64,000 nucleotides of DNA from Zygnema circumcarinatum SAG 698-1b (lineage: Eukaryota > Plantae > Zygnematophyceae): NCBI GenBank assembly GCA_037447605.1, contig CM074810.1, forward strand, positions 3,692,880 to 3,756,879. Direction: 5' to 3'. Shown here piece by piece: positions 27,054 through 63,418 of this stretch (position 1 is its first letter; every line of letters starts with the position of its first letter). The position numbers and the translations under genes were made by a program. The notes under the pieces are model-generated. The model searched no databases and was not told the DNA's origin. It worked only from the letters and a program-made list of their open reading frames with translations.

Positions 27054-30000
27054 GTGGCGGTGGAGACGAATCTCATGCTGACTGAACATTCTGATTTTGT
27101 TGGGAAGATCCAGGTTGCGGATCTGAAGCGGCCATGGCTGATTGACTCTGGCGCTTCCACGCACATGTGTGGCGACAAGCGAATGTTCTCTACGCTGGAC
27201 ACCTTGGAGAGGACCAGATCTGTTCACTCGGCAACCGGAGAGGGAGTGACAGTTACAAAGGGAGGAGTAGTAAAGATGATCCTCGGAGACGGCTCTGTCA
27301 TCTACGAAGAAGAAAGAGAAGAGCGGTTGTGCATCGGTGACGTACTTCACACCCCTGATCTGAAACAGAACTTCATGTCAGTCAGTCAAGTATGTAAGAG
27401 GGGGTACGAAGTCACCTTTAAGGAGAAGTCTTGCGTAGCTACTCACTTGGAGTCGGGGAAGCGGCTGTTTGAGGGGTACGAGAAGGGAGGCCTATATTAC
27501 CTTCATTATAGGAGAGAAGAAGATGAGGGTGTGATGGCCGTAACTGAGGGTGCAATAAATCTCTGGCATCGTAGACTTGGTCATCTAAACCATAGGGGAC
27601 TGCAACAGCTTGCTACAAGGGGGCTGGTACGCGGGTTAGACATTGACATAGTTGAGAAGGAGCTAGGCTTTTGCAAAGAGTGTGTAGAGGGGAAGGCGCA
27701 TCGGAGACCCTTTTCGAGGAGTGGAGAGGAGTCATTTCACGCGCAGGAGAAACTAGAATTGGTACATACCGATTTGTGTGGCCCCGTGACACCGGCAACA
27801 AGTGGAGGAGCTCGCTACTTCATCACCTTCATTGATGATTTTTTGAGGAAAATTTGGGTGAAAATTTCAAAGAGGAGCTCAATTTTCAGCTTTCAAAGAA
27901 TTGGAGACCGACATGAGCGAGAGCGTTTAGAACTTGAGACACTGCCGCTCACACAACGGAGGGGCATTCAATCGAAGCAGTTTCGCGGTACTCTGAAGGC
28001 TCTGCAATAAGGATGGATGATCGCCCTGCTCAAAGTAATGGAGCTGCTGGACAGGGTCACATATGCTTGGGGGACATGGCACGAACCATGCTGATAGATT
28101 CCCCCTTCCCGGCATCTTTTTGGGGAGAGGCGGTGATGACTGCCACTTACCTTAGAAATAGATGCCCATCTTTTGTGCTTAAGGATCAGGTTCCTGAAGA
28201 GGTGGGCAGCGGGAGGAAACCCACGGTGTCCCACCCTGAAGACCTCCGGAGCGCGCTGCTGTCGACATGCCCCAGGGCGAGGCAGCAAGAGAAAGTTCGA
28301 CCTTGAGCGTGGAAGGGTACCTTCCCAGCCATCACTGGAGGCCGGACCCATCGGGTGCTGGACCCCCAGCAAACGAGAGCTGGATAGCTTTGAGCACGCC
28401 ACGGTGCACGCAGAAGAGTGGCTCAGCTGACAGGCTGAGACCGCACCCCAAGGCAGGCTTTGTAGTTTGTAGGATCCAGCATGTGGAGACCAGCGAAGAG
28501 GCATGGACGCCTTCCAGGCTACACCTGCGAGAGCAGACCACATGCCGCGACAGCGCGGAGCGAAGCCAAGCAACGCCGAACGTGGAGGCGGCCGTGGGAG
28601 TTGACCCCGAGGAGCCGCAAGCGGGGGAGCCGCAACCGTCGACGGAGACGACACCACTACACACTCACCTGTCCGACGAGGAGAACTCGGCCGAAACTGT
28701 ACCTTTGCATGGGCAGGAGTCTGAGGATTTGGAGACGGCTGAGAAAGAGGCTATGTTGTCGAGCATGCCTCTCGGGTTTGTCCCGGGGATTTTCTTCAAC
28801 ACGAGGAGCCGGAGAGCGCAGGGACCTTGGAGGAGCACCTGTGTGGTGAGGAGGCTTGTCATGAGAGGGCCTCCCAGATGAATCTAGAACAGGAAGGTGC
28901 CTGTACATGTGCTTGGACCTTTGCGGCTGCGGACGCTTCATGACCACCGAACCACAAACCTTTGAGAGGGTGACGACGGGGTCGACTGGAGAGAAGTGGC
29001 GAGAGTGGTTCCACAGGCGAGCTGGCAGAGGCTTGCTACAGACGGATGCGACTCGAGGGCCGCCAGGGAAGGAGGGCCATTGGATGCAAGTGGGTGTTCA
29101 AGGTGAAGCGAAAGGCGGACGGGAGCGTCGACCGTTACAAGGCGCGTCTGGTGGCAAAGGGCTTCAACCAAGCGTACGGAATCGACTACACGGAGACCTT
29201 CGCCCCCGTGGTGAAGTTCAACTCCCTCCGTGCCCTAATATCGATTGCAGCGGCCGAGGGGATGCACGTACATCAACTCGATATCAAGACCGCGTTTCTG
29301 TACGGAGATCTCGCTGAGGAGATCTACATGGTACAGCCCGAAGGGAAAGTTGTCCCGGGGCAGGAGCATCTCGTTTGTTGTCTTGTGAAGAGTTTGTACG
29401 GACTGAAACAGGCGCCCAGGATTTGGTACGAGAAAATTGATGACCTCTTGAGGAGTAACGGATTTGCGCGATTCGAGACGGATCATTCCGTCTACCGACA
29501 AGGGGAAGAGGCGGATCTCATGTACGTTGGGATCTACGTGGACGACCTCATAATGGTGAGCCTCTCATTGGAGAGAATCAATGATTTGAAACAGCTTTTG
29601 GAAGCTAACTTCAAAATGTCGAATCCTAGGGGAGGACAGGATTCTCTGAGGAACGTAGGCCAAGAGGGGGCAGTGGATTGGCATCATTTCCTTTGTTGAG
29701 AAGAAGCACGCCGAACACTTGCCAGTGTTTAAGTGAGGAGCCGCCGCCCGAGTCCCATGGGGATACTCGGAACGCCATTGTTGAAGACGATGATGGCCGC
29801 AGATGCGGAGGTACAGAGAATGTACGGAGTCCCGCAGATCGGCAATCGGAATCAACGTACCCATGGATAGGTACTCGTCTGACCGCGAGCGCGAGCCCAG
29901 GGAGAGTCGGCCACCAGAATCCCGGTCTGACATTGGGAGGCCGTGAACCGGATCTTCACATCGCTGAAAGGGACCCCTGGATCACGGCCCGATGTTCGAG

Positions 30001-32403: not shown

Positions 32404-33714
32404 TCAGCTGGTGGCACCACTGCCCGCCCTGCCCTGACCTCGCTGCACAGACCCTGCCGGCGGGCCCGAACCCTTGGTAGACAATAGAGGGACCTCCCTG
32501 CTGACACGGTGGATCCGGATGCCTGACCACCATGGCCACCGCTCCCATCGCTGGAGCCAACGATCCTCCCGCGCGGCGTGGAGGACCAGCGGGCCCACAG
32601 GCTGGAGCGCGAGAGGTCTCTCGCTGGGCTCCTCACGGTGACTCCACGAAACTCAGAACCGACGCCTGCAGGAGGACTTCAGGACGATCACCGCCTGACT
32701 TGCGGAGGCCCCAGTGCACCAGAGATCAGTGAGCTCATCACATCAGGAGCAGCCCCTCCTCGGGGCTGCTGCTGGCCGCTGGCTTGCTGGTGCGCTGAAC
32801 TGTCCTGCCCTCCTCCTGGTCCTGGCCCTTCCGGAGGTCCCTCACCGGTGCCCCCGATGGGGGTGACCCGTGACTCTGGTGTGCCCGTCGCTGTGGACAC
32901 CCCACCTGACACTCTTGGTCCGGGGCCACACCAGCTGCTTTGTGGCTGAAGTTGTCGCATCTCCCTGACTTGGGGTTGCGCAACGCGCCAGTCTCCCCCA
33001 CCTTGGCCCGGGAGCGCCTGCCATCGACCCTCGCGGCCCTCCAGCAGCTGGTGAGCAGTTGAAGAAGACTCATCAAACCCCTTCACGCTGTGCACACACA
33101 CTACACTTGAGTTCAGCAAACAGGGCGAGAGTGAGAGAGCTTCAGAGGGCAGTGGCGGAGCCCGGCCCAGGGGCTGAATGGAGACCGGGCACGTCGCTGG
33201 ACGAGAGCCACCCACGCCCCTTTACGCTTCCCCTGCCCATCCTCTGGACCAGGATGCAGGATTGCAGGATGCCTGCCCAGGCTGCAAACTGCCACGTGTC
33301 CTTTCCCCAGCGGAATGAACCAGAAGGTACAACCATGAACGTCAGCCGATTGCGGTGCTGGCGATGGCGCGGCTGCGCAGTCAGTCTGCATGGTCGATAC
33401 CGACGGCGGCGCGGCGCGGGGTCTAACTGACATCCTTGCCGGGCTATGGGGCCCGGAGGTGTACGGATGACCGCTCGTTGTAAAATAAGAAGCAAGAGAA
33501 CCACCCGTACCTCGATGACACCGTGACGCCACACATACATGTTCAGCATGCTTGTGGGTATTCCAACCTTGCATGGCTGATATCCCATTCCCAGAGGTGC
33601 TGCCTGTCTCAGGTGGCTCTGAACGCTTGGCGATTGCTGCTGCCCAGATGAGAGCACCAGACGGGGAGCGTGCTGCAGGACACCTCTGCGGGTGACTGCA
33701 GTGTTTTTGCTGAC

Positions 33715-35001
33715 ACCATGCCCCCTGTGAGACGTGGGAACGCCCCTCACGTGTGTAGAGGGCAAAGGCAGCTCGGAGCCCTGTCTGACGTCGCAGCCAA
33801 TTGTGAACCGGGAGGGCTCAGCCACAATCCCGTTAGTCCCTTTCTGAGTTGCGGTGGGGATTGGCCTAGGACCCCCTGCGGCCTGCCCTGCGGCCTCTGT
33901 GTTACTCTCCCAGGACAAGTTGATGAGCTCCTGGCAATTGTCTAAGTTGCCCTCGGCTTCCCATGTGCTATGTTCAACCCCATAGCCCAACCATTTCACG
34001 AGGTATTCGTGACGGGAAGATCGACCTTTTCTCACAATACGGTGGGCTCGAATGGTTTCAACTTCATATTGCAGCTTCACTTGTCAAGTTCCATGGGAGA
34101 GGGGATCCATCCTCCCATTGCCACCGCAGACCTTTACAAAACCCACATGAAAGACCGGATGCACCTTCATGTGGGATTGTAAATCCAACCTGTAAGCGAC
34201 ATCATTGATTCGCTTCACGACCTTGAAGGGTCCGATGAAGCGGGGCCACAGCTTACGTGTTCCGCCATAAGCTTTGAGTCTCAAGTTCGCCGTACTTAGC
34301 AACACTTCATCGCCCTCATTGAAAGTGAGTTGGGTACGGTGACGGTCAGCATAGGCCTTTTGTCGCGACTGGGCCGCTAGCAGGGTCTGCCGTGCCCTCT
34401 GCAGCGCCTCAGACATTAGCCGGACAAAAGATCTGACTGCGGGAGGTTGAGTCCCATCAGTCCCTCTCTACTTCCAAGGGTCGGGGGTTCTGTGGACGCT
34501 ATGTTCCACGGATTAGGGGGCTGATCCTTGGCTGAAGGATTTTACAGGGATGCTGACCGAAGTTCAGGAGACAGAGGTGGACGCAATGGACTCCTGGACA
34601 TTATTGATGGCAGACCACCACTGGGAGCAGCTCGTCCTGACCCCATCCGGGGCAGACTCTGCACACAACGTTGAGGGTTGAGGATCTGCTTACCCGCCGC
34701 CGGCGATCGGTTTGAGGAAGCTGCAGCCATGCGCCCGCACGATTTGAGCACTTCCGCCCGGCAGAATGGCTGGTGATCGTGGATTATGGCCATACACACA
34801 TCTCTCGCATGAAGACCATGCTGGTTCTCATATCGCCACAGCCGTGATGCTCTGGTTACGCTGCAGAGCCGGTGCAGCACCATCTTGTTGAGCCGGTCGA
34901 GAAGACCAGGGACGGAGTCATGCCCTCGAGGTGTCACAGGAAGATCTGCGATCAAGTCCATACCCACACTGTCCACTTTGAAGCAGGTGTGAGGGGGATG
35001 C
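33715..35001 (-). mobile_element. Ty3/gypsy chromovirus 3' portion (integrase plus chromodomain), truncated by a 100-N gap
   Basis: Integrase start VGMDLIADLPVTPRGHDSV, GPY/F region AQSRQKAYADRHR...KLWPRFIGPFKVVKRINDVAYRLDL...HPVFHV, chromodomain YEVETIRAHR...EYLVKWLGYGVEHSTWE. Likely PPT AGGGGG and 3' LTR start TGTCAGC at 33715 running leftward. Confidence 0.9.
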
Positions 35002-40470: not shown

Positions 40471-41344
40471 GCTGCCACGTGGCATGGGAGGTTTGGGGTG
40501 AAAGAGTGGGAAGGGAGAGAACGAGAAGATGGAGAACAGGGAGGTGGGGATGGGGGGAGAGGTAGGGGAGGGGGAGAAGGGAGAGGGAGAGGGAGAGGGA
40601 GAGGGAGAGGGAGAGGGAGAGGGAGAGGGNNNNNNNNNNAGAGGGAGAGGGAGAGGGAGAGAGAGAGAGGGAGAGAGAGAGGGAGAGGGAGAGGGAGTGG
40701 GAGAGCAGGGAGATGGCGAGAGCGTGTAAAACGGATATCAAGGAATAAAGGCAGTGATAGAAGGGCGGTAGCGAGAGAAGAAGAGATCGAGAAGGGAGTG
40801 AAATTGCGAGAGTGCACTGCGTTGAGAGAAGGAGAGGGAGAGGGAGAGGGAGGGGGGAGAGTGAGGGAGGGGGCGAGAGAGGCAGAGGGAGAGGGAGGAA
40901 GAGAGGTGAGGGAAGGCGCCACGTGCCTTGTCGACTGCTGACTGCCAAGTGTCGTAGACTCGTAGGCCATACGGCCTACTGTAGAGTAGTATCGTATCGG
41001 GGTACGATGTTGGTTTCTTATCGGTCGTATCGTATCGTATTGTTTTGCTGTATTGTACCTTCCGATATGGCGCAGGACGGAGGGACCATGAATGAGATCG
41101 CCAACTGTCGGCCAGCCATTGGAATGGCAATGGTTGGACGGCCAATGGCTAGCAACCATTGGCAATGGTTGGTCAAATGGTCCGAATTGTGCAACATTGC
41201 ATAGATTTTACCTAATGAGTGCAGTTGACCATTGGAATGGTCCGCCATAGAAGCAGAGTTCCGCTCCAAGATTTTCTTTCCAAGAGAGACGACAGGAGGT
41301 GGCATTACTCTCGCGATGGCGATGACATGGCCAACATCATCATG

Positions 41345-41866
41345 GGGAATCACGAGGAACTGGGCGCAAAGGAGAACCACGAGGAACTGGGCGCAAAGAG
41401 GAACCACGAGGAACTGGGAGCAAAGGAGAACCACGAGGAACTGGGCGCAAAGGGGAACCACGAGGAACTGGGAGCAAAGGAGAACCACGAGAAACTGGGC
41501 GCAAAGGAAAACCACGAGGAACTGGGGGCAATGGAAAACCACGAAGAACTGGGCGCAAAGGAGAACCACGAGGAACTAGGGGCAAAGGAAGACCACGAGG
41601 AACTGGGCGCAAAGGAAAACCACGAGGAACTGGGCGCAAAGGAAAACGACCAGGAATTGGGCGCAAAGGAAAACCACGAGGAACTGGGGGGCGCAAAGGA
41701 AAACGACCAGGAATTGGGCGCAAAGAAAAACCACGAGGAACTGGGGGGCGCAAAGGAAAACGACCAAGAATTGGGCGCAAAGAAAAACCACGAGGAACTG
41801 GGGGGCGCAAAGGAAAACGACCAAGAATTGGGCGCAAAGGAAAACCACGAGGAACCGGGCGCAAAG
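41345..41866 (+). repeat. 27-bp minisatellite, 19 units, ending in a 57-bp (30+27) higher-order dimer repeated three times
   Basis: Consensus GAGAACCACGAGGAACTGGGCGCAAAG. 16 x 27 bp + 3 x 30 bp = 522 bp, matching the span. Confidence 0.95.
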
Positions 41867-42967
41867 GACCTAAGCACAAAAGAAAAATGCTAGGAGCGGA
41901 AAACTACGCCTCGGCTCAAAACCGCTTGAAGCCCTCCCTCTCTTGAAGCCGCCGCTTTCAAAGTCATTAGTCCGGTTCACCATGTTTGCATGATCCTACA
42001 AAGTGGCCTTTGAAGCGCATTCAAAAACTCGACCACTCCACCAAAAGTGCCCGCAAACCCTAATTTTGTCTCCACTCCTCCCCCCTCCTCTCCCCTCCTC
42101 CCCCTCATACATCATCCAGCCAAAACGAGCATACTTTTGGAGACAACTCACACTTCCAGCACATTCAATCAAAAAATAAAAGCTTAAAACAAAGCCAAAA
42201 GCACGGTTACCTCCTCCTGTACACAACTAAAACCCTCGAACAAGGGAAATTTCCAAGTCCTGAAGTCTGAAAGCCTTTCTGCTTCACATCATAGTTGCTG
42301 CTCACACTCCATCTATACATTTTTTCACTTTCAACGTTTGTCTGCGGAAGTTTAGAGGTTTTCTGCAGCTCACCATTCAAATCCTTTGTAGCATAAATTA
42401 AACCTCTACAGATCTTCACGAACCCCTCGCCCTCCCCTGCCCCCTCTCTCTGTAACTCTCCCTCTATCTCCCTCTCCCTCTCCGTATCTCACACTCTCTC
42501 TCTATGTAGCTGTTCATGCTCCTGCTGCTGCATTTCTATCAACATACTTCCAGATATCTACACTTCCTCATCCAAAACTAGGACTTCCTGTGTTCCAAAA
42601 TTCAGGTTTCCAGATATCATGCCCCTACCGCACACAGTGGCGCGCTGCTCTCCCTTCCTCTCTCCCCTCCCTCTCTCTCCTCCCTCGCTTTCTCCCTGCT
42701 CACCTTACCACTATCCCCCTCACTTCTCTCCTAGCGTTCCTCCCTCCCTCCCGCTCCTCCCCCTTTCTCTTCCCCCTCCCTCTCCTTCGCTTCACTTTTC
42801 TCCTCTCTCCTCTCTCAGTCCTCCCTCTCCTTCCCCTCACTTGTCTACTCCTTCTCCGCCCTCTCCTCCCCCTCACATCTCACCTCTCACCCTCCAGCTC
42901 CTCCCTCTCCTTCTCCTCCTCCTCCTCCTCCTCCTCCTCCTCCTCCTCAGCCACAGCTGCCTTCTCG

Positions 42968-44026
42968 TCACTCCCCTCCCTTCTCTTTCACATGCGTCGG
43001 ACTCCTCCTTGGAACAGTCACAGTCACAAGCCCCTCTCTCACATCCATGGCTGCCGCACCTACCACAGCGTCTTCCGGCAGCTCCACCTTCCTCTCAACA
43101 CTCCCAAAGAAGCGCTCCTGCAGTAGTGGTTCAGCGCCCTCCACGCTGACATGTGGCAGCCGCCGGCTGGCTCTCAGCGTCAATGAGGGTCTTTCCCCTG
43201 CCTCGGTGGTCATGCTCACATCCATGGCCGCCGCATCCATCATGATGACGTATGCATCCGCCGCCTGCAGCACATCCAAAGCTATGGGGCCATGGCCATG
43301 CCCCTTCCACTTGTTCTTCATTTCATGATGTCCACGTCCATGTCCGTGTCTGTACCCATGGCCATGGCCATGCTTGAGCTTCCCATGCCCATGCCCATGC
43401 TCATGCGCATGCCCATACCCATGGCCATCATGACTATGGCCATGTGGGGATTCTTTTCCTTTGCCGTTGTGCTCGATCCCCTCCACCGACGATTCCTGGG
43501 TCCTCCCATCTTGCCCATGATGCTCATGTTTATGGCCATGGCCATGCTTGAGCTGCCCATGCCCATGTCCATGACCAAGCCCGTGCCCATGCCCATAGCC
43601 ATGGCCATGGCCATGGCCATGTGGGGCTTCCTCTCCTTTTCCTTCGAGCTTGGTCTCCTCCACGGAAGCTTCCTGGGTCCTTCCGTCCCGCGCATGATGC
43701 CCATGCTTATGGTGTTGGCCTCCATGCGGATGGCCATCCTGCATGAGGAGGGCGGAGGAGAGGCAGCCAGGACCGCGATGGTGGCCATGGCCATAGCCAT
43801 GGTGAGAATGCTTGAAGGAAGGGGGCCCATGGATGGGAGGAATGTCAGAGGGGGCATGGCCATGGCGGCAGCGACGGAGCTTGTGGGCCTTTTGATACCC
43901 GCCATGGCTGCCATGGCGGTCTCCATGGTGCAGGGAACCGTCGCGGCTGTGGGGCTCATCGGGAGACACGTGGAGGGCAGCCATGGCGGAGCTTGGAGGG
44001 GAGGGAGGGGAGTCCGTGGCTGTCAT
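42968..44026 (-). CDS. Small heat-shock (alpha-crystallin/HSP20 domain) protein with a long His/Gly-rich N-terminal region
   Basis: Intronless ORF (in-frame ATGs at 44134, 44026 and further downstream; stop TGA 42968-42970). C-terminal ACD: PIALDVLQAADAYVIMMDAA...LTLRASRR...QERFFGSVERKVELPEDA...GLVTVTVPR. Confidence 0.85.
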   Translation of the reverse strand: MTATDSPPSPPSSAMAALHVSPDEPHSRDGSLHHGDRHGSHGGYQKAHKLRRCRHGHAPSDIPPIHGPPSFKHSHHGYGHGHHRGPGCLSSALLMQDGHPHGGQHHKHGHHARDGRTQEASVEETKLEGKGEEAPHGHGHGHGYGHGHGLGHGHGHGQLKHGHGHKHEHHGQDGRTQESSVEGIEHNGKGKESPHGHSHDGHGYGHAHEHGHGHGKLKHGHGHGYRHGHGRGHHEMKNKWKGHGHGPIALDVLQAADAYVIMMDAAAMDVSMTTEAGERPSLTLRASRRLPHVSVEGAEPLLQERFFGSVERKVELPEDAVVGAAAMDVREGLVTVTVPRRSPTHVKEKGGE

Positions 44027-44970
44027 GGCTGCCGGAGGGAGACAGAGAGAGAGAGGGAAGGGGAGAGAGGTGGGAGAGAAGCCATGGGTAAGTCTCCACC
44101 CCATACTGAAGGGACCCTCGCTAGCAAACGCCAATCACGGCTTGCCACGTCATCACATTTAAAAAAAAACGGTTCCATGCAGTCCCAGTCGTATCCCACC
44201 GTTCTGGTACAAAGAAAGGGTTGAAGAACGGAACTTAGGTTCCATGAATCAGCAGTAAAACACGCCACGTCGGATAACGCATTTTTACTTTTCCTTTTCT
44301 TAAAAGGAAAAAATTGAAAAAATAGCGGTTCACGCCAAGTGGAAAAATTGACCGAGCAACAAGTGTCACGTGTAGCCCTGAAAAACTGGCCAATCAGTGA
44401 ATGCCACGCACGACCTCGGGGACCACGCCTTTTCTCCTCCACTCGCCACTTTCATTTCCCCTCGTGAACCACCCTCCCTGTTCACACGCGCAAAATAATC
44501 CCTTCACACATGGTCTACTGCTCGCCTTTACGGCGTTCACACGCAAACCAGTCAAAGATTTTTTTGGTGACGTGTCGAGCTGTCAGTGGTTGTCATGTCG
44601 GCACCGACAAAGATCGCTCGCCAGCCAATGGTGTTCCACCACGTGGATCCCCTCTACGTTGCCCTAAACCCTGCTCCCTTCGGGCCCTGTCGTCGATACG
44701 GACCCGAGGGGCCCCCCCTTACCGCGATTTCTCTCCCGCATTCAGACACGGGCTCTCCCTCCCCCTCTCCCTCTCTCTCCCCCACCCTCTCCCTCTCCCA
44801 CTCCATCCGTACGCCTTTTCCTACAATAAGTACCTGTCTCATTCCCTTCATCTCTCCTCTACCACCGTTCCTGCTCTCACCCACTCCTGCTTCTCTCCCT
44901 CTCTCGCGGCTCTCTCCCGGCTCTCTCCCGGCTCTCTCCTGCGCTCTCCCACTCCCGGGTCTCTCTCGCT

Positions 44971-47373
44971 ATGGCTCTCACAGCGCACTCCCAGAAGTTA
45001 CTATCCTCTACCGCCCTCTCCGCCTCCTCTCTCTCGCGCGCCTCCCCCCTTCCTTCGTCCTCCTTCACTCCCTCCAAGTCCCTCTCCTTTCCCTCCCTCT
45101 CTCTCTCCCCCTCTCCCTCTCCTTCTCCCTCTCCCTCTCCCTCCCTCTCCCGCCGTTCGATTTCCGCGGTCTCCTCCGCCTCCATCCCCGCCACCCCTTC
45201 CTCCGATGTCACGTCACCCTCCAACCCTGAACTCCACTCCTATAAAAGTGCCCCCGCGAAGATCAACAAAGAACGTGTAGTCCAAATTCACACGATTCGG
45301 GGCTTTGAAATGGCGCTGAAATTAGCGGAATCGAAGCTTGTCGTCGTGGAATATGCGAATTCCGAATGTGAAGAGAGCGCCAAGATATATCCGGCCATGG
45401 TCGATCTAAGCACGAGAGCCAAAGACGCAGTGTTTTTGTTGATCATGGGAGATGCTTCGGAGGAGACGAAGGAGCTATGTAGGAGGGCAGATGTGAAAGA
45501 ATTTCCGCATTTTGTATTTTATAAGGAGGGAAAGGTGGTCCATTCGGAGAAGAACATTGTTCCGGATATGCTCCTTGGGGGAGTGCTTTACTATGGGAAC
45601 AGCGATGCTCCGATTCAAGAGCTCTCTAGCGAAGGGGAGTTGGAGAGCTTTGTGAAGGTGAGGAGGTTTGGTTTGATGCTGGTCACGTGGAAAGTGGGTC
45701 TTGTTCAGAATTTGACTTAATTGTGGGAATTTGGGGGAAATTTGGGGGAGGTTTGGGAAATTGGAGGATATATGGGGGTTTGAGGCCGAGAATTGGGGGA
45801 ATTGGATAGAATTGGGGGAATTGGATAGAATTGGGGGAATTGGAGCCGGGTTTTTGGGCTTATGGAAATGAGATTGAGTGCAGCTGCTGGTTTTCCTGGT
45901 TTAGAGTGGAATCTGGCATCAAGGAGACTGACTAGGGACGCAATTTTGAGGGACTTTATCGGCGATTGGTTCCCAATTGGGGATCCGCTGCCCGATTGCT
46001 GATGTTGAATGAGGGAGGAAGAGGAAGAGGAAGGGAGAAGGGCGTGGGAGAGAGAGAGAGAGGGAGAGAGGGAGGATTTGCTCAATTCTTTCTTTTGCTG
46101 TTTGTTTAAGTAAATTGGAGAGGTTTAGGCTCAGATGGTGTGGTCTGCTGTCTCGTTGGAGTTGGTAAGAGTCAGAGAGAGACAGAGAGGTGAGGGGGAT
46201 GGGAGAGAGGGAAGGAACGAGAGAGAGATCAGTATGATTATTCCATGTTGGATAACCTACTGTTATCTCCTGCTATAAATTGCTGTATCAATTGTTGAAG
46301 GGTTTGTGGAATTGGGAAGTCTTTGAAATTAAATAATTATCCAAGCATCTGTTGGATCTATCTGCACTTTTCAGTCGCAGGTTAACTTGCTCTTCAATTA
46401 TGCTGTCCTTTGGGTCTTCTATTTCTTACCTACTACTGGGTACAGGATTGCCGTGCATTTTATCAGTTCTGGCCTTTTTTGGTATTGAACATGTATCTTT
46501 CTTTCCCCACAGGCCCCCCAAACAAAACTCCCTTCCCCTCCACTCTCACTCCTCCATAGCCCCGTCCCCACGTCCCGTCCCCACTCCCTCCTTCTCCCCC
46601 GCTCCTCCCTCCCCACCTCACTCAATCCCCCCCCCTTCCTCCCTCACTCCTGCTCCCTTCCCCCCTCACTCAACCCCCCTTCCCGCTCTCCCTTCCTCCC
46701 TCACTCTCCCCCCCTCCTCCCCTCCCCCCTCACTGAACCCCCCTTCCCCCCCTCCCTTCCCCCGCCTCACTCCCTTCTCCCCTCTCTCCCTCCCTCTCCC
46801 CCGCTCCTCTCTTCCCCCCTCACTCAACCCGCCTCCCCCCTCTCCCTTCCCCCTTCTCTCACTCCCTTCTCCCCTCTCTCACTCCCTTCTCCCCGCTCTC
46901 ACTCCCTTCTCCCCTCTCTCACTCCCTTCTCCCCTCTCTCTCCCTTCTCCCCTATCTCACTCCCTTCTCCCCTCTCTCCCTCCCTTTTCCCCTCTCTCAC
47001 TCCCTCTCCCCCTGTCTCCCTCCCTCTCCCCCCTCACTCAACCCCCCCTCTCCCCCCCCCTTCCCCGCAGGATCATGGAGCCGACCAGCGCCTTGTGGTG
47101 GTGGACGTGAGTCTCCGCCACTGCGGGCCCTGCGCCAAAGTGTACCCCGCCGTGGTCAACCTCTCGCGGCGCATGGCTGACGTGGCCGTGTTCGGGCGCG
47201 TGATTGGCGACAGCAACGAGTCCTGCGAGAGGATGATGCGTGCGCTGGACGTGAGGGAGGTGCCGACCTTCCTCTTCTACCGCGGGGGGGAGCCCTGCGG
47301 ACGATACGTGGGATCGGCGAAGGGGGATCTCATAGGGGAGGTGTTGAAGCATCAGGGGGTGAGGTGTACGTGA
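44971..47373 (+). CDS. CDSP32: Plastid two-domain thioredoxin CDSP32
   Basis: Exons 44971-45657 and 47071-47373 (phase 0). Ser-rich transit peptide. Domain 1 has [10 protein letters not shown]...VFLLIMGD...GVLYYG. Domain 2 has [10 protein letters not shown]...EVPTFLFYR...[16 protein letters not shown]. Confidence 0.95.
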
Positions 47374-55305: not shown

Positions 55306-56370
55306 GGCGGAGGAAGAGAGGGAGACTGGAAGGGGGGGGAAGAGGGTGAAGGGATAAGGAAAGGAGAGGTAGAGTGCAAAGGGGGAGAGAGGGAGGGGGG
55401 GAGGGGGAGAGAGAGGGAGAGAGTGATGAGAGTGGGAGGGAAGGGCGTGGGAGAGGGAGAGGGAGGGCGCCGTACCGACCACGTGCGCTTTCAAACCCTA
55501 ACTGCGTTCGCTGTCGCAACGAAGCGTAATATGGGACGAGCGAGAGCGACCAACAGTTTGTTGGTCCAATGCTTGGCAAACGTGCCAATGGTTGGCAGCA
55601 ATTCCAATGGTTGCCAGTGGTTGCAACCATTGACTCCAATGCTTGGCGATCACAAGCAATGGTTCTTTGGTTCTCGAATCAGTTTTTGGAAACCATTCCA
55701 ATGGTTGGCGGCAACCATTGAATCCAATGGTTTCTTTGTTGTTGCGTCACATGACTCCAAACCCGCAGCTGAATTTCGCTGCGAAGGCGCTTTAGAACGA
55801 AAGTTGAATTTCAAAACATTGATTAAAACATTGTTTGTGCATGAGACCACGCTACAAGGCATGAAAGGCCAATGTTTTCATGTTCTCAATGCCTGCATGG
55901 GCCTTAGGACCGTACGATGTGAGGGCATCGTAACGGTCCACCTTCCAACTTGGCATACATTGTACATGAATGGTAACAACAACAACAACAACAACATGCA
56001 ACAACAACATGAAACAACAACATGCAGCAACATGCAACAACAACAACAACATGCACATCCTCCACAGACGAGGTTGGCCATTTCAGCTTGATATGAAAGT
56101 CCTATGGCAGAGGAAAGTAACCAAAAGAACACTTGTAATCTCTTATAACAAAAATCCTGGTTAAAAAAACCAAGCAATCTCCTTTTATACAGTTAGAGGG
56201 CCCCAAAAAAACAGTAACTTCTCTTCACATATTGTGAAGAGAAGTTTTCGCAGTGCCATGAAAGGATTCGCACGATTATAATAAATATAGAAAGCCACGC
56301 AAAATTTTAGAGCTTCATTCAGGCCAATGACCTCGACATTAGGGGGGGTTTCATGTCCCATCATGTCGCG

Positions 56371-57358
56371 TCACACCTTCACACTACCAGATGCTCCCTG
56401 CAAACTGCATTGCAGTCGCCACAGCTTCAGTCCAACGCCCATCTGCACAAGAGCACAGCATATGTGCAAAGAGAAGAGAGTGAGAGCACGCGAGAGAGAC
56501 GGGGGAGATTGAGGAGAAGGGAGGGGGGAGGGGGAGGGGGAGGGAGAGGGAGGGGAGGGGAGGGGAGGGGAGGGGAGGGAGGGGGAGGGGAGGGAGGGGG
56601 AGGGGAGGGAGGGGGAGGGGAGGGGGAGGGGGAGGGGGAGGGAGGGGAGGGGGAGGGGAGGGGGAGGGGAGGGAGGGGGAGGGGAGGGAGAGGGAGAGGG
56701 GGAGGGGAGGGGAGGGGAGGGGAGGGGAGGGGAGGGGAGGGGAGGGGAGGGAGGGGGAGGGAGAGGGGAGGGGAGGGGAGGGGAGGGGAGGGGGAGGGAG
56801 GGTGGAGGGAGGGGAGGGAGGAGGGGAGGGGAGGGGGGAGGGGGAGGGGGAGGGAGAGGGGGAGGGGGAGGGGGAGGGGGAGGGGAGGGGGAGGGGGAGG
56901 GGGTGGTGGAGGGAAGGGGAGGGGGTGGTGGAGGGGTAGGGGGAGGAGGGGGAGGGGAGGGGGAGGGAAGGGGGAAGAGGAGGGGGAGGGGGAGGGGAGG
57001 GGGAGGGGAGGGGGAGGGGGAGGGGAGGGGGAGAAGGAGGGGGAGGGGGAGGGGAGGGGGAGGGGGAGGGGGAGGGGGAGGGGGAGGGAAGGGGGAGGGG
57101 GAGGGAAAGGGAGGAGGGAGGGGAGGGGAGGGGAGGGGAGGGGGAGGGGGAGGGGAGGGGAGGGAGTGGAGAGAAAGAGAGAGCGAGAGAGTGAGTGAGA
57201 GAGACCATTGGATGTGAGCGACTACAACAGTTTTTGAAGAAACTGGTGAAGAGTTCAGATTTGAACCTCGCAGAGGTCCCTTCACTTGCGAGGAGGTGCA
57301 GGTGGAGGGGTCTTGGCGAGGGGAGGAGGGCTGCGTTTAGGGAGGCCATGGCTGCCAC
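56371..57358 (-). CDS. Possible short gene with a plastid transit-peptide-like first exon
   Basis: Exon 57206-57358 (MAAMASLNAALLPSPRPL...) ends at a GT donor. A pyrimidine-rich intron follows, then a TGTGCAG acceptor near 56445 giving MGVGLKLWRLQCSLQGASGSVKV. No recognisable domain. Confidence 0.3.
56515..57190 (+). repeat. Nearly pure polypurine (GGGGA/GGGA)n tract
   Basis: About 670 bp almost entirely G and A, with G3-G5 runs. Confidence 0.9.
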
Positions 57359-58586
57359 CGGGTGTCCCTATTCAGTCAACACACGAACAAGAAGGAGAGT
57401 TAACAACACGCTGCACGCGCCCCTTGGTGCGAGGCAACCACAAAATGAATAAATCATGACGAAAACATGACTAAAACGTGACTAAGTCCTAAGCAGGTCT
57501 TCGGAAGAGATTGAGACGAGAAGCTTTGGTTCAACATCCAATGCAATACTTAAGACTTACAAGGGATACACGCCTTCTTGTTGGCCGAAGCTGCGTAACC
57601 AGAGTTGCATTTGCAGGTTTTGGTTTTCAAGTCACATGTGCCTGCTCCTGAGCATATTCCCCCAGCTTGAGTGACGTCACAGAAGCTCTTGCATACTGAG
57701 AGACTTTTTTGAGGCTGATCCGGGTCATAATAGTCGCAATATGAAGGATACTCATCCCAAAGGCAGTTATATATGGAACGGGGGCTGAAGACGCAGTTCC
57801 CAGAGTAGTCCACGACTCCACCGATATCTGAATAAACAAACCACAAAAGTGAAATAGGGCCCGTCAAGTAGTTGTTCGCGAGGTACATGTCGACCCCCTT
57901 CATCGAGAGCATGTCAACTCCGCCAACGAGGAAGTTGTTGTTCAATGTTCTGCCACAAAAAAACAGAAAAAAAAAAAAAGAAAAAAAAAACACACACACA
58001 CACACACACACAAACATTCGCAAGCAAGTTTTCTCAGTTTCAGTTTGACGGTAAACGGTCAACATGACAGGTATGATACATGAAGAAGGGGGTGCCTAGT
58101 TCTAGAGAAGCTCCACGTGGCCTGGAGACATTGGAGAGAGAGTGGAAGGGTGAGAGAGAGAGAGAGAGAGAGAGAGNNNNNNNNNNGGAGGGGGAGGGGG
58201 AGTGGGAGAGAAAGAGAGAGCGAGAGAGTGAGTGAGAGAGACCATTGGATGTGAGCGACTACAACAGTTTTTGAAGAAACTGGTGAAGAGTTCAGATTTG
58301 AACCTCGCAGAGGTCCCTTCACTTGCGAGGAGGTGCAGGTGGAGGGGTCTTGGCGAGGGGAGGAGGGCTGCGTTTAGGGAGGCCATGGCTGCCACCGGGT
58401 GTCCCTATTCAGTCAACACACGAACAAGAAGGAGAGTTAACAACACGCTGCACGCGCCCCTTGGTGCGAGGCAACCACAAAATGAATAAATCATGACGAA
58501 AACATGACTAAAACGTGACTAAGTCCTAAGCAGGTCTTCGGAAGAGATTGAGACGAGAAGCTTTGGTTCAACATCCAATGCAATAC

Positions 58587-63418
<4,832 letters not shown>

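What the first reader, a model, noticed from the sequence alone, without database searches (positions are those of the whole stretch)
42968..44134. Small heat-shock protein fused to a very large His/Gly-rich domain
A C-terminal alpha-crystallin domain follows roughly 230 residues holding about 57 His (hand count), mostly as HG dipeptide runs. They are organised as two internal repeats (GRTQEASVEETKLEGKGEEAPHGHGHG.. and GRTQESSVEGIEHNGKGKESPHGHSH..). Typical sHSP N-terminal arms are short and hydrophobic. Poly-HG tracts bind Ni/Zn/Cu in proteins such as SlyD, HypB, Hpn and some dehydrins. Because ACDs oligomerise, this could be a multivalent metal- or pH-responsive chaperone, metal sponge or condensate scaffold. 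I know of no described sHSP class with this architecture. The His-rich part is codon-diverse, not a simple DNA repeat.
Basis: partly seen in the sequence, partly recalled or inferred. Interest (0 to 1): 0.72.

Follow-up and report, generated by a model that had tools for sequence, protein, structure and literature searches.

The report
Small heat-shock protein with histidine-rich arm
An alga carries a transcribed gene for a small heat-shock protein whose long, floppy front part is almost one quarter histidine; a few relatives and many uncharacterised fungal proteins are built the same way, so this looks like a recurring but unstudied chaperone design that may respond to acidity or metals.

Summary
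The minus-strand ORF 42968-44134 encodes a C-terminal alpha-crystallin domain. AlphaFold2 gives it pLDDT above 90, and all top PDB matches are small heat-shock proteins. About 250 predicted-disordered residues precede it, with 57 His in 237 residues, an internal 59-residue duplication and charge swinging from +3 (pH 8) to +57 (pH 5).

RNA-derived contigs from three studies run colinear across the whole ORF with no splice.

- An exhaustive search found five relatives with 190-344-residue arms of 12-16% His. Two are complete transcriptome ORFs, one is from a metagenome and two are RNA contigs. They group together on the domain tree.
- Pezizomycotina fungi hold a separate, large family of long His/Gly-armed sHSPs, annotated only as hypothetical.
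- I found no paper describing either group.

The "codon-diverse" claim is also only half right. His is CAT in 50 of 60 codons, and the tracts are decayed palindromic CATGGC hexamer repeats.

The target lacks the C-terminal IXI motif, an aromatic arm and any upstream heat-shock element. Metal binding, pH switching and condensate formation remain inference; the nearest precedent is zinc binding by the HSPB5 N-terminal region.

Verdict: a real gene and a new variant of a known kind.

The parts
42968..44026 (-). Most likely coding sequence: 352 codons plus stop from the ATG at 44026, giving 37.8 kDa and pI 7.3. Alternative in-frame starts are at 44104 (378 aa) and 43984 (338 aa).
   Evidence: ORF and ATG positions come, mass and pI. 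Relatives begin with a similar short Ser/Pro leader before the His-rich part. The start codon itself is not shown experimentally.
43001..43285 (-). Alpha-crystallin domain, residues 248-342 of the 352-aa model.
   Evidence: AF2 gives pLDDT >90 with seven strands. The first 50 Foldseek PDB hits are all sHSPs, with TM by target 0.49-0.82. The motifs ERxxGxxxRxxxLP and P-x14-G-L-V-T-V-T-V-P-R are kept.
43265..43975 (-). His/Gly-rich arm: 237 residues, 24% His, 22% Gly, only 2-3% aromatic, predicted disordered.
   Evidence: Composition is. AF2 pLDDT is <50 over most of residues 1-245. Computed net charge is +3 at pH 8, +8 at pH 7, +32 at pH 6 and +57 at pH 5.
43544..43720 (-). Internal repeat unit 1: acidic spacer GRTQEASVEETKLEGKGEEAP, then an HG run, then QLKH.
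   Evidence: Pairwise alignment of the two 59-residue units.
43367..43543 (-). Internal repeat unit 2: GRTQESSVEGIEHNGKGKESP, then an HG run, then KLKH.
   Evidence: One difference between runs (43394 C>T in run X6) falls on a third codon position, GGG to GGA, and is synonymous.
42971..43000 (-). Short C-terminal tail SPTHVKEKGGE with no I-x-I/V motif. The stop is at 42968-42970 and a (GAG)n microsatellite follows at 42898-42948.
   Evidence: Alignments: P0039 has IEI, P0004 has IKM, L001 has ISM, and the target has none.
44027..44457 (-). Transcribed leader upstream of the start, as the minimum extent seen in a contig. It carries several upstream ATGs. One 51-codon upstream ORF starts at 44178 and has its stop at 44023-44025, overlapping the ATG at 44026 (ATGA).
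   Evidence: Contigs are colinear to 44457 (X1) and to 44741-44746 (X6, X2). Contigs cannot show the true 5' end or the strand.
44367..44645 (.). Region shared with the divergent thioredoxin-like gene. It has two CACGTG G-boxes (44367, 44640) and three CCAAT matches, but no three-unit heat-shock element anywhere in 44000-44850.
   Evidence: Regex scan allowing one mismatch. These are consensus matches only.

Best explanation
SHOWN:
- This is a real, transcribed, intron-less eukaryotic gene. Earlier notes of this scan call the host a streptophyte alga.
[quoted passage not shown] A folded C-terminal alpha-crystallin domain follows an intrinsically disordered N-terminal arm of about 250 residues with 23% His and 21% Gly.
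- The arm grew by a 59-residue duplication and by expansion of a palindromic CATGGC-type hexamer.
- The protein belongs to a small clade of relatives that all keep long His/Gly/basic arms. Arm composition is retained over a distance at which the folded domains are only 33-45% identical.

INFERRED:
- The arm replaces the usual short hydrophobic client-binding arm with a titratable one. Near neutral pH it is almost uncharged, and it becomes a strong polycation as the cytosol acidifies. The same imidazoles can chelate Zn, Cu or Ni.
- I therefore think the protein is a stress-gated sHSP. Protonation or metal loading of the arm would switch its self-association and its binding to clients or polyanions, while the ACD supplies dimerisation. 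This would give reversible assemblies or a histidine-based metal buffer under acid, desiccation or oxidative stress.
- With no IXI motif and few aromatics, it is probably not a classical large-oligomer holdase.
For: Fold and family.

Arm composition, charge curve and repeat.

Transcription without splicing:
- Contigs of runs X1, X2 and X6 come from three studies. They are shown to be RNA-derived by a canonical GT-AG junction, 45657 joined to 47071, in the neighbouring gene.
- The same runs lie colinear over 42962-44457 (X1) or 42962-44746 (X2), with no joint.

Relatives with arms:
- P0004 (309 aa) and P0039 (461 aa) are complete ORFs in Trinity transcriptomes.
- L002 is a roughly 309-aa ORF on a metagenome contig.
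- L001 and L003 are RNA-like contigs.
- Arms of the four full-length ones (L001's is cut short at 67 aa, 9% His) are 190-344 aa with 12-16% His. Sixty other sHSP arms have a median length of 38 aa and a median of 0% His.
- The five group together on the ACD tree (SH-aLRT 86), and shuffled labels never do as well.

A shared 'HGY-x-K' stretch near the arm start suggests that the arms are homologous and not merely similar in composition.

Precedent: human HSPB5 (5% His) binds zinc with high affinity through its disordered N-terminal region and is cross-bridged by zinc (PMC12803927).
Against: - No experiment or computation here shows metal binding, pH response, oligomer state or chaperone activity.
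- The His tracts are decayed microsatellites, so part of the composition could be mutational drift and not selection.
- The arm has 2.8% aromatic residues. Aromatic and Met residues of the N-terminal extension were required for client binding in tested sHSPs (PMC9458469).
- The IXI motif is absent, and the Pfam score is just below its cut-off.
- There is no heat-shock element upstream.
- The leader carries many upstream ATGs, so translation and the true start are uncertain.
- Contigs give neither strand nor transcript ends, and depth is only 2-6 times that of the neighbour's intron.
- Support for the clade is moderate (33 in one tree, 86 in the other).
- The organisms of the relatives are unknown.
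Confidence: 0.45

Rival explanations
1. The gene is a real sHSP, but the His/Gly arm is mostly a neutral by-product of microsatellite and tandem-repeat expansion. On this view it is a tolerated low-complexity spacer with no specific metal or pH role, and any function lies in the ACD and short flanking segments.
For: - There are period-6 arrays, 15 CCATGG palindromes and His = CAT in 50 of 60 codons.
- The repeat units of the relatives differ from each other (P0039 has its own SRSHxHHHERDxHGRHGE unit), so the arms expand independently in each lineage.
- Positional conservation in the arms is poor.
- The genome around the gene is full of simple repeats.
Against: - His-rich composition is kept in all five relatives, although their ACDs are only 33-45% identical to the target's. 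It is also seen in a separate fungal family.
- The repeats are decayed and interrupted by conserved acidic spacers. They are not a pure microsatellite.
- The reading frame that gives His is kept continuous with the ACD.
Confidence: 0.2
2. The arm works mainly as a hydrophilic protectant or sequestrase-type scaffold, like LEA proteins, dehydrins or Hsp42. It would drive condensates or vitrified assemblies during desiccation or heat by multivalent weak contacts, with metal binding incidental.
For: - The arm is long, disordered and Gly-rich with alternating acidic and His/Lys blocks.
- Yeast Hsp42 is an sHSP/sequestrase whose literature centres on a prion-like domain, and C. elegans sHSP sequestration depends on the disordered N-terminal extension (PMC9458469).
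- G-box/ABRE-like CACGTG motifs lie upstream, with no heat-shock element.
Against: - The features tied to sequestrase activity in tested sHSPs (aromatic and Met residues in the arm, and an IXI-bearing tail) are missing here.
- No expression data under desiccation could be read, because run metadata are coded and the contigs are not quantitative.
Confidence: 0.2
3. The annotated architecture is wrong. The His-rich stretch would be an untranslated leader, or translated in another frame, and only a short ACD-only product is made. Alternatively the locus is a decaying pseudogene.
For: - The leader has many upstream ATGs.
- Other frames on both strands are also open across the hexamer repeats.
- The ACD is divergent and sits on a long branch, scores under the Pfam cut-off and has no IXI tail.
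- The relative L003 carries a frameshift in its ACD.
- The exact protein is absent from the 15-billion-protein collection.
Against: - Two relatives are complete ORFs with the arm in frame in assembled transcripts, and L002 has the same layout on a metagenome contig.
- The ACD is modelled with very high confidence and keeps the family's near-invariant residues.
- The His frame runs uninterrupted into the ACD.
Confidence: 0.1

Closest known systems
Canonical plant, algal and bacterial small heat-shock proteins (HSP20/PF00011; e.g. pea class II HSP17.7 5ds1, wheat HSP16.9 1gme)
   Same: They share the alpha-crystallin beta-sandwich, the ERxxGxFxRxxxLP and P-x14-G-V/L-L-T-V motifs, and a total size within the 12-43 kDa range.
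   Different: The arm is about 250 residues where the median is about 38. It is 23% His where the median is 0%, and it is poor in aromatic residues. There is no C-terminal IXI motif and no heat-shock element upstream.
Human HSPB5 (alphaB-crystallin) as a zinc-binding sHSP (Janowska et al. 2025, PMC12803927)
   Same: In both, an sHSP's disordered N-terminal region uses histidines. In HSPB5 it binds zinc tightly and reversibly, and zinc cross-bridges the oligomers.
   Different: HSPB5 has 9 His in 175 residues (5.1%), while this protein has 59 in 352. There is no orthology. HSPB5 has an IXI tail and forms large oligomers. Zinc binding is untested here.
Yeast Hsp42 and other sequestrase sHSPs (PMC9458469; the Hsp42 papers listed)
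   Same: A long disordered N-terminal extension is attached to an ACD and gives the protein an assembly or sequestration role beyond plain holdase activity.
   Different: Hsp42's extension is prion-like, and tested sequestrases depend on aromatic and Met residues plus the IXI tail. The arm here is His/Gly-rich, aromatic-poor and lacks IXI.
Uncharacterised Pezizomycotina 'SHSP domain-containing proteins' (e.g. Penicillium angulare P0095, P. roqueforti P0126, Cladophialophora P0164, Dothistroma P0211)
   Same: They have the same layout: a 150-350-residue Gly/His/Pro/Arg-rich arm with internal repeats and acidic spacers, followed by an ACD.
   Different: - Their His content is lower: median 6% and maximum 11% of the whole protein, against 17% here.
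- Their ACDs form their own clade, with a conserved N-terminal box and IXI-like tails such as V-D-V-E.
- A joint clade with the algal-type group is not in the best tree but is not rejected (p-AU 0.15). Convergence and common descent are both open.
His-rich metal-binding tails and proteins (Hpn, HypB, SlyD, His-rich dehydrins) and His/Gly/Tyr-rich pH-responsive coacervating proteins (from my own knowledge, not tested here)
   Same: Runs of His alternate with Gly or small residues, which is chemistry suited to Ni/Zn/Cu chelation and to pH-switchable charge.
   Different: No sequence homology was found. None of them carries an alpha-crystallin domain. The comparison rests on composition only.

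Membership tests
Small heat-shock proteins (HSP20 / alpha-crystallin domain, PF00011) | Alpha-crystallin beta-sandwich fold | tested here: met
   The AF2 model has pLDDT >90 over residues 248-342 with seven strands. The first 50 Foldseek PDB matches are all sHSPs, with probability 1.00 and TM by target up to 0.82. The alignment used for the model consisted of sHSPs, which favours this fold.
Small heat-shock proteins (HSP20 / alpha-crystallin domain, PF00011) | Significant sequence similarity to ACDs | tested here: met
   phmmer against 1.84 billion representatives gives 74 hits at E<1e-3, the best at 3.2e-10. The best PDB hit is a pea class II sHSP at E 2.9e-5. The Pfam PF00011 score of 19.3 bits is 1.5 bits below the gathering cut-off of 20.8, so by Pfam's own rule it is a borderline non-call.
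Small heat-shock proteins (HSP20 / alpha-crystallin domain, PF00011) | Conserved consensus regions (ER..G.F.R...LP; P-x14-G-V-L-T-V) | tested here: met
   The near-invariant columns E304, G308, R312, L316, P317, G332, L334 and P339 of a 69-sequence alignment are all kept in the target. The target reads QERFFGSVERKVELPEDA...EGLVTVTVPRR.
Small heat-shock proteins (HSP20 / alpha-crystallin domain, PF00011) | C-terminal I-x-I/V anchoring motif that builds large oligomers | tested here: not met
   The tail after the ACD is SPTHVKEKGGE, with no such motif. The relatives have IEI (P0039), IKM (P0004) or ISM (L001). The motif is also absent from some accepted sHSPs such as C. elegans Hsp-12 (PMC9458469), so it bears on oligomer type and not on membership.
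Small heat-shock proteins (HSP20 / alpha-crystallin domain, PF00011) | Short, hydrophobic/aromatic N-terminal arm used for client binding | tested here: not met
   The arm is 249 residues, with 2.8% F+W+Y, 8.4% I+L+V+M, 22.9% His and 21.3% Gly.
Small heat-shock proteins (HSP20 / alpha-crystallin domain, PF00011) | ATP-independent holdase activity, dynamic oligomers, stress induction | not testable with these tools
   Only the presence of RNA-derived contigs could be shown. No canonical heat-shock element lies in the 850 bp scanned upstream.
Hsp42-type sequestrase sHSPs | Long disordered N-terminal extension with prion-like, aromatic- or Met-rich composition, plus an IXI tail | tested here: not met
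   A long disordered arm is present. Its composition is His/Gly-rich and aromatic-poor, and the IXI motif is missing. The feature list is taken from PMC9458469.
His-rich metal-binding proteins (Hpn / HypB / SlyD-tail type; HSPB5-type zinc binding) | Dense histidine clusters able to chelate divalent metals | tested here: met
   There are 57 His in 237 residues, with runs such as HGHGHGHG, HGHGHKHEHH and HAHEHGHGHG. This is composition only.
His-rich metal-binding proteins (Hpn / HypB / SlyD-tail type; HSPB5-type zinc binding) | Measured metal binding, or homology to a known metal-binding protein | not testable with these tools
   No family other than HSP20 was found by Pfam or by the protein atlas. 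Binding needs ITC or ICP-MS.

The most novel reading that the evidence does not exclude
His-armed sHSPs would be a distinct functional class found in a small algal-type clade and, independently or anciently, in Pezizomycotina fungi. In this class a titratable poly-His/Gly disordered arm turns the alpha-crystallin scaffold into a chaperone, sequestrase or oxidation-resistant zinc/copper buffer that is gated by pH and metals. It would switch on when the cytosol acidifies or free metal rises during desiccation, heat or oxidative stress.
Probability: 0.3. Interest if true: 0.75.

Novelty: new variant of a known kind. Interest (0 to 1): 0.55.

Why it matters
Small heat-shock proteins are tuned mainly through their disordered N-terminal arms, and how those arms sense stress is an open question.

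This protein is a natural extreme: an arm with about 60 titratable imidazoles whose computed charge moves by more than 50 units between pH 8 and pH 5. It would be a clean model for testing two ideas. One is pH-gated chaperone assembly. The other is the recently proposed idea, from HSPB5, that His-rich, Cys-poor sHSPs act as oxidation-proof metal buffers.

A compositionally similar arm recurs in a large, unannotated fungal family. That suggests a general design and not a one-off. The fungal family offers genetically tractable organisms (Penicillium, and possibly Aspergillus relatives) in which to test it.

For algal biology, it adds a candidate stress protein in a lineage studied for the move of plants onto land.

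Tried and rejected
- A word-indexed search for full-length kin of 195-616 aa using the ACD region found nothing.
- A profile search with the six-sequence alignment was swamped by low-complexity candidates: 8000 were scored and only P0004 and P0039 were recovered, plus the lead to the fungal protein P0095.
- Exact look-ups of the target with three alternative starts found it absent from the protein collection. I therefore cannot say whether any public annotation calls this gene.
- P0004 and P0039 have no contig on record, so their organisms stay unknown beyond 'EukProt, Trinity transcript'.
- A metagenome scan with ACD patterns returned only ordinary bacterial sHSPs.
- Paper searches for His-rich sHSPs in algae or fungi, for HG repeats and for the SRA run numbers gave nothing relevant, apart from the HSPB5 zinc paper and the sequestrase papers. 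Two searches failed on term format.
- The scan for a heat-shock element was negative.
- No second ACD lies in the window.
- Earlier findings of this scan hold nothing on this gene or on HSP20.
- I considered and rejected an apicomplexan origin, my first impression from the low-complexity sequence, after the earlier notes and the plant-like best hits.
- I rejected the opposite-strand and alternative-frame ORFs (MAMAMA and PW frames) as products of the palindromic hexamer.
Full report
**What is in the sequence**

On the minus strand, 42968-44134 is open for 388 codons counted from a TTG. In-frame ATGs lie at 44104, 44026 and 43984. Residues 54-290 of that ORF hold 57 His and 53 Gly, with 33 HG and 26 GH dipeptides. 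The last 99 residues hold only 2 His.

The two internal repeats are real. Each is a 59-residue unit made of an acidic spacer (GRTQE[A/S]SVE...GKG.E.P), an HG run and a (Q/K)LKH end. The units are about two thirds identical as protein.

'Not a simple DNA repeat' needs qualifying:
- His is CAT in 50 of 60 codons.
- The 711-nt arm holds 15 CCATGG palindromes.
- Tandem Repeats Finder reports four period-6 arrays at 74-86% match.
- Such hexamer runs occur nowhere else in the window.

CATGGC is close to its own reverse complement. This is why frames on both strands (the 'MAMAMA' and opposite-strand ORFs) are also open. ORF length by itself is therefore no evidence for the His frame.

**The C-terminal domain**

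- Pfam HSP20 (PF00011) matches residues 290-382 at 19.3 bits, just under the 20.8 cut-off.
- Against PDB sequences the best hit is the core domain of a pea class II sHSP at E 2.9e-5, followed by bacterial and yeast sHSPs.
- An exhaustive phmmer search of 1.84 billion representative proteins with the 110-residue domain gave 74 hits at E<1e-3. The best was 3.2e-10, and no close or self hit appeared.
- AlphaFold2, run with a 69-sequence alignment, models residues 248-342 of the 352-aa protein at pLDDT >90 as a seven-stranded sandwich. Almost everything before that is below 50.
- The first 50 Foldseek PDB matches are all small heat-shock proteins.
- The near-invariant family positions (ER..G...R...LP and P-x14-G-L-V-T-V-T-V-P-R) are kept.

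So the domain is a genuine but divergent alpha-crystallin domain.

Two family features are missing. The tail after the domain (SPTHVKEKGGE) has no I-x-I/V motif, and the arm has only 2.8% aromatic residues.

**Is it a gene, and is the His region in the transcript?**

Contigs of runs X1, X2 and X6 come from three studies. All three contain a loose end at 45658 whose continuation matches 47072 in the window. The skipped stretch, 45658-47070, begins with GT and ends with AG. These runs therefore hold spliced RNA of the neighbouring thioredoxin-like gene.

In the same runs, single contigs of 1484-1859 nt lie colinear with the genome from 42962 (42976 in X1) to 44457 (X1) or 44741-44746 (X6, X2). 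They show no joint across the ORF and no length difference in the repeat.

Limits of this evidence:
- Contig ends sit at CT- or GAG-rich simple repeats, so they do not mark transcript ends.
- Contigs give no strand.
- Depth is a poor measure: 73, 215 and 321 over the gene, against 37, 35 and 75 over the neighbour's intron.
- A fourth run (X7) held none of it.

The transcribed leader is at least 350-430 nt long and carries several upstream ATGs. One 51-codon upstream ORF has a stop that overlaps the ATG at 44026. This may mean translational control, or that the true 5' end is further downstream.

The 850 bp upstream contain two CACGTG boxes but no three-unit heat-shock element.

**Relatives**

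The word-indexed search for full-length kin found none, and the exact protein is not in the 15-billion-protein collection. Among the 74 exhaustive hits, however, those nearest to the target carry the same kind of arm.

| Sequence | Source | Notes |
|---|---|---|
| P0004 | EukProt Trinity transcript, complete ORF | 309 aa; 45% identical in the ACD by phmmer, 39% by BLASTP |
| P0039 | EukProt Trinity transcript, complete ORF | 461 aa; its own SRSH.HHHERD.HGRHGE repeats |
| P0059 / L002 | ENA metagenome | the ORF from MAVIF... is about 309 aa |
| P0002 / L001 | Logan contig, A-rich 3' end | partial arm |
| P0027 / L003 | Logan contig, A-rich 3' end | carries a frameshift inside its ACD |

The four full-length relative arms (L001's is partial, 67 aa, 9% His) are 190-344 residues with 12-16% His and 16-18% Gly. 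The arms of 60 other sHSPs from the same search have a median length of 38 residues and a median of 0% His, with a maximum of 9.4%.

On maximum-likelihood trees of the ACD alone, the five armed sequences fall on one side of a branch. SH-aLRT support was 33 in the first tree and 86 in the second. None of 500 label shuffles did as well. The pair target+L001 had support 94 in the first tree and P0039+L002 had 99.

A short 'HGY-x-K...' stretch near the start of the arm aligns in the target, P0039 and L003 (a similar stretch in L002 is not placed in those columns). This hints that the arms are homologous and not only alike in composition. The second refutation test, that orthologues lack the arm, is therefore also not met. 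The organisms of these relatives remain unknown.

**A second, much larger set**

The profile search turned up Penicillium angulare P0095, a 516-aa 'SHSP domain-containing protein'. It has a roughly 340-residue arm full of GHHGP, HGHG and GRHGRK runs and acidic spacers.

Searching with its ACD gave 169 proteins of 284-575 aa at E<1e-5. They come from Penicillium, Cladophialophora, Phialophora, Venturia, Dothistroma, Hortaea, lichen fungi and many unnamed contigs. All are annotated as hypothetical or merely as HSP20 family.

Whole-protein His in these is 1.4-11%, with a median of 6.1%; 25 of 120 are at 8% or more. They form their own clade (support 100). Forcing them together with the algal-type group costs 29.8 log-likelihood units but is not rejected (p-AU 0.15). 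Convergence and deep common descent both remain open.

I found no paper describing either group. The held library is incomplete, so this is not proof that none exists.

**How it most likely works**

Shown: a folded ACD, a long disordered arm, an extreme and conserved His/Gly composition, and transcription.

Computed: the arm's net charge goes from about +3 at pH 8 and +8 at pH 7 to +32 at pH 6 and +57 at pH 5, while the ACD stays near -1 to -4.

Inferred: the arm is a switch. Protonation during cytosolic acidification, or chelation of Zn, Cu or Ni by the imidazoles, would change its self-association and its binding to clients or polyanions. The ACD would provide at least dimerisation.

The best experimental precedent is human HSPB5. 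Its disordered N-terminal region, in a protein with only 5% His, binds zinc tightly and reversibly, and its oligomers become cross-bridged by zinc. The authors propose an oxidation-resistant zinc reservoir (PMC12803927).

Against a classical holdase or sequestrase role: tested sHSPs need aromatic and Met residues in the arm, and the IXI-less Hsp-12 proteins tested negative for sequestrase activity (PMC9458469). This protein has few aromatic residues and no IXI motif.

My confidence by level:
- About 0.85 that the architecture is real and expressed.
- About 0.45 for the pH/metal-switch mechanism as a whole.
- 0.2 for a neutral low-complexity expansion.
- 0.2 for a protectant or condensate role without metal specificity.
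- 0.1 for a mis-modelled or decaying gene.

**Comparison and novelty**

By fold, motifs and size (37.8 kDa) it is a member of the sHSP family. Its N-terminal arm has a composition not described in the literature I could search.

It is not unique. A handful of close relatives and a large fungal family share the plan, and all are uncharacterised. I therefore rate it a new variant of a known kind. It is of moderate to good interest, because it offers an extreme natural test case for pH- and metal-gated sHSP function.

**Housekeeping**

Earlier notes of this scan supplied only the lead that the genome is a streptophyte alga. I did not test that here. None of them concerned this gene.

Noticed in passing
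P0095-P0215 (public proteins): Pezizomycotina fungi (Penicillium, Cladophialophora, Phialophora, Venturia, Dothistroma, Hortaea and lichen fungi) hold a large family of 284-575-aa sHSPs. Their N-terminal arms are His/Gly/Pro/Arg-rich and repeat-bearing. All are annotated as hypothetical, and no paper was found on them.
   Followed up: partly
window 41219-41893: A 27-bp tandem repeat of about 25 copies reads NHEELGAKE on the + strand and is open in several frames on both strands. It lies about 1 kb beyond the 3' end of the sHSP gene, and RNA contigs reach at least 42000.
   Followed up: no
window 44812-47101 (+): A thioredoxin-fold gene (PF00085) runs divergent to the sHSP and has a Ser/Pro-rich N-terminus. 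Its exon ends at 45657 and a canonical GT-AG intron spans 45658-47070. Its contigs are far deeper than the sHSP's in all three RNA runs. The two genes share about 700 bp containing two G-boxes.
   Followed up: partly
window 44023-44178 (-): A 51-codon upstream ORF in the sHSP leader has its TGA stop overlapping the candidate start ATG at 44026 (ATGA). Eight further upstream ATGs lie between 44746 and 44105 (and one more between 44104 and 44026). This could mean uORF-controlled translation, if the leader is really this long.
   Followed up: no
L003:161-1296 (Logan contig of SRR8128903): This relative has a 217-residue His/Gly/Lys-rich arm. Its reading frame shifts inside the ACD near L003:955, which is either an assembly error or a broken copy.
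   Followed up: no
window 27054-28010 (+) and 33142-34080 (-): There are retrotransposon pieces. One ORF has Pol beta-barrel and GAG-pre-integrase domains (copia-like) and another has a chromodomain.
   Followed up: no
window 56000-62000: There is very strong purine skew (GC skew up to 0.69, AT skew up to 0.67), with ORFs of 600-740 codons open in several frames on both strands. This suggests a long simple or tandem repeat.
   Followed up: no
window 43394: Run X6 reads T where the window has C. On the coding strand this changes GGG to GGA, a synonymous third-position change in the second His repeat. It lies 35 letters from a contig end, so it may be an assembly effect.
   Followed up: partly
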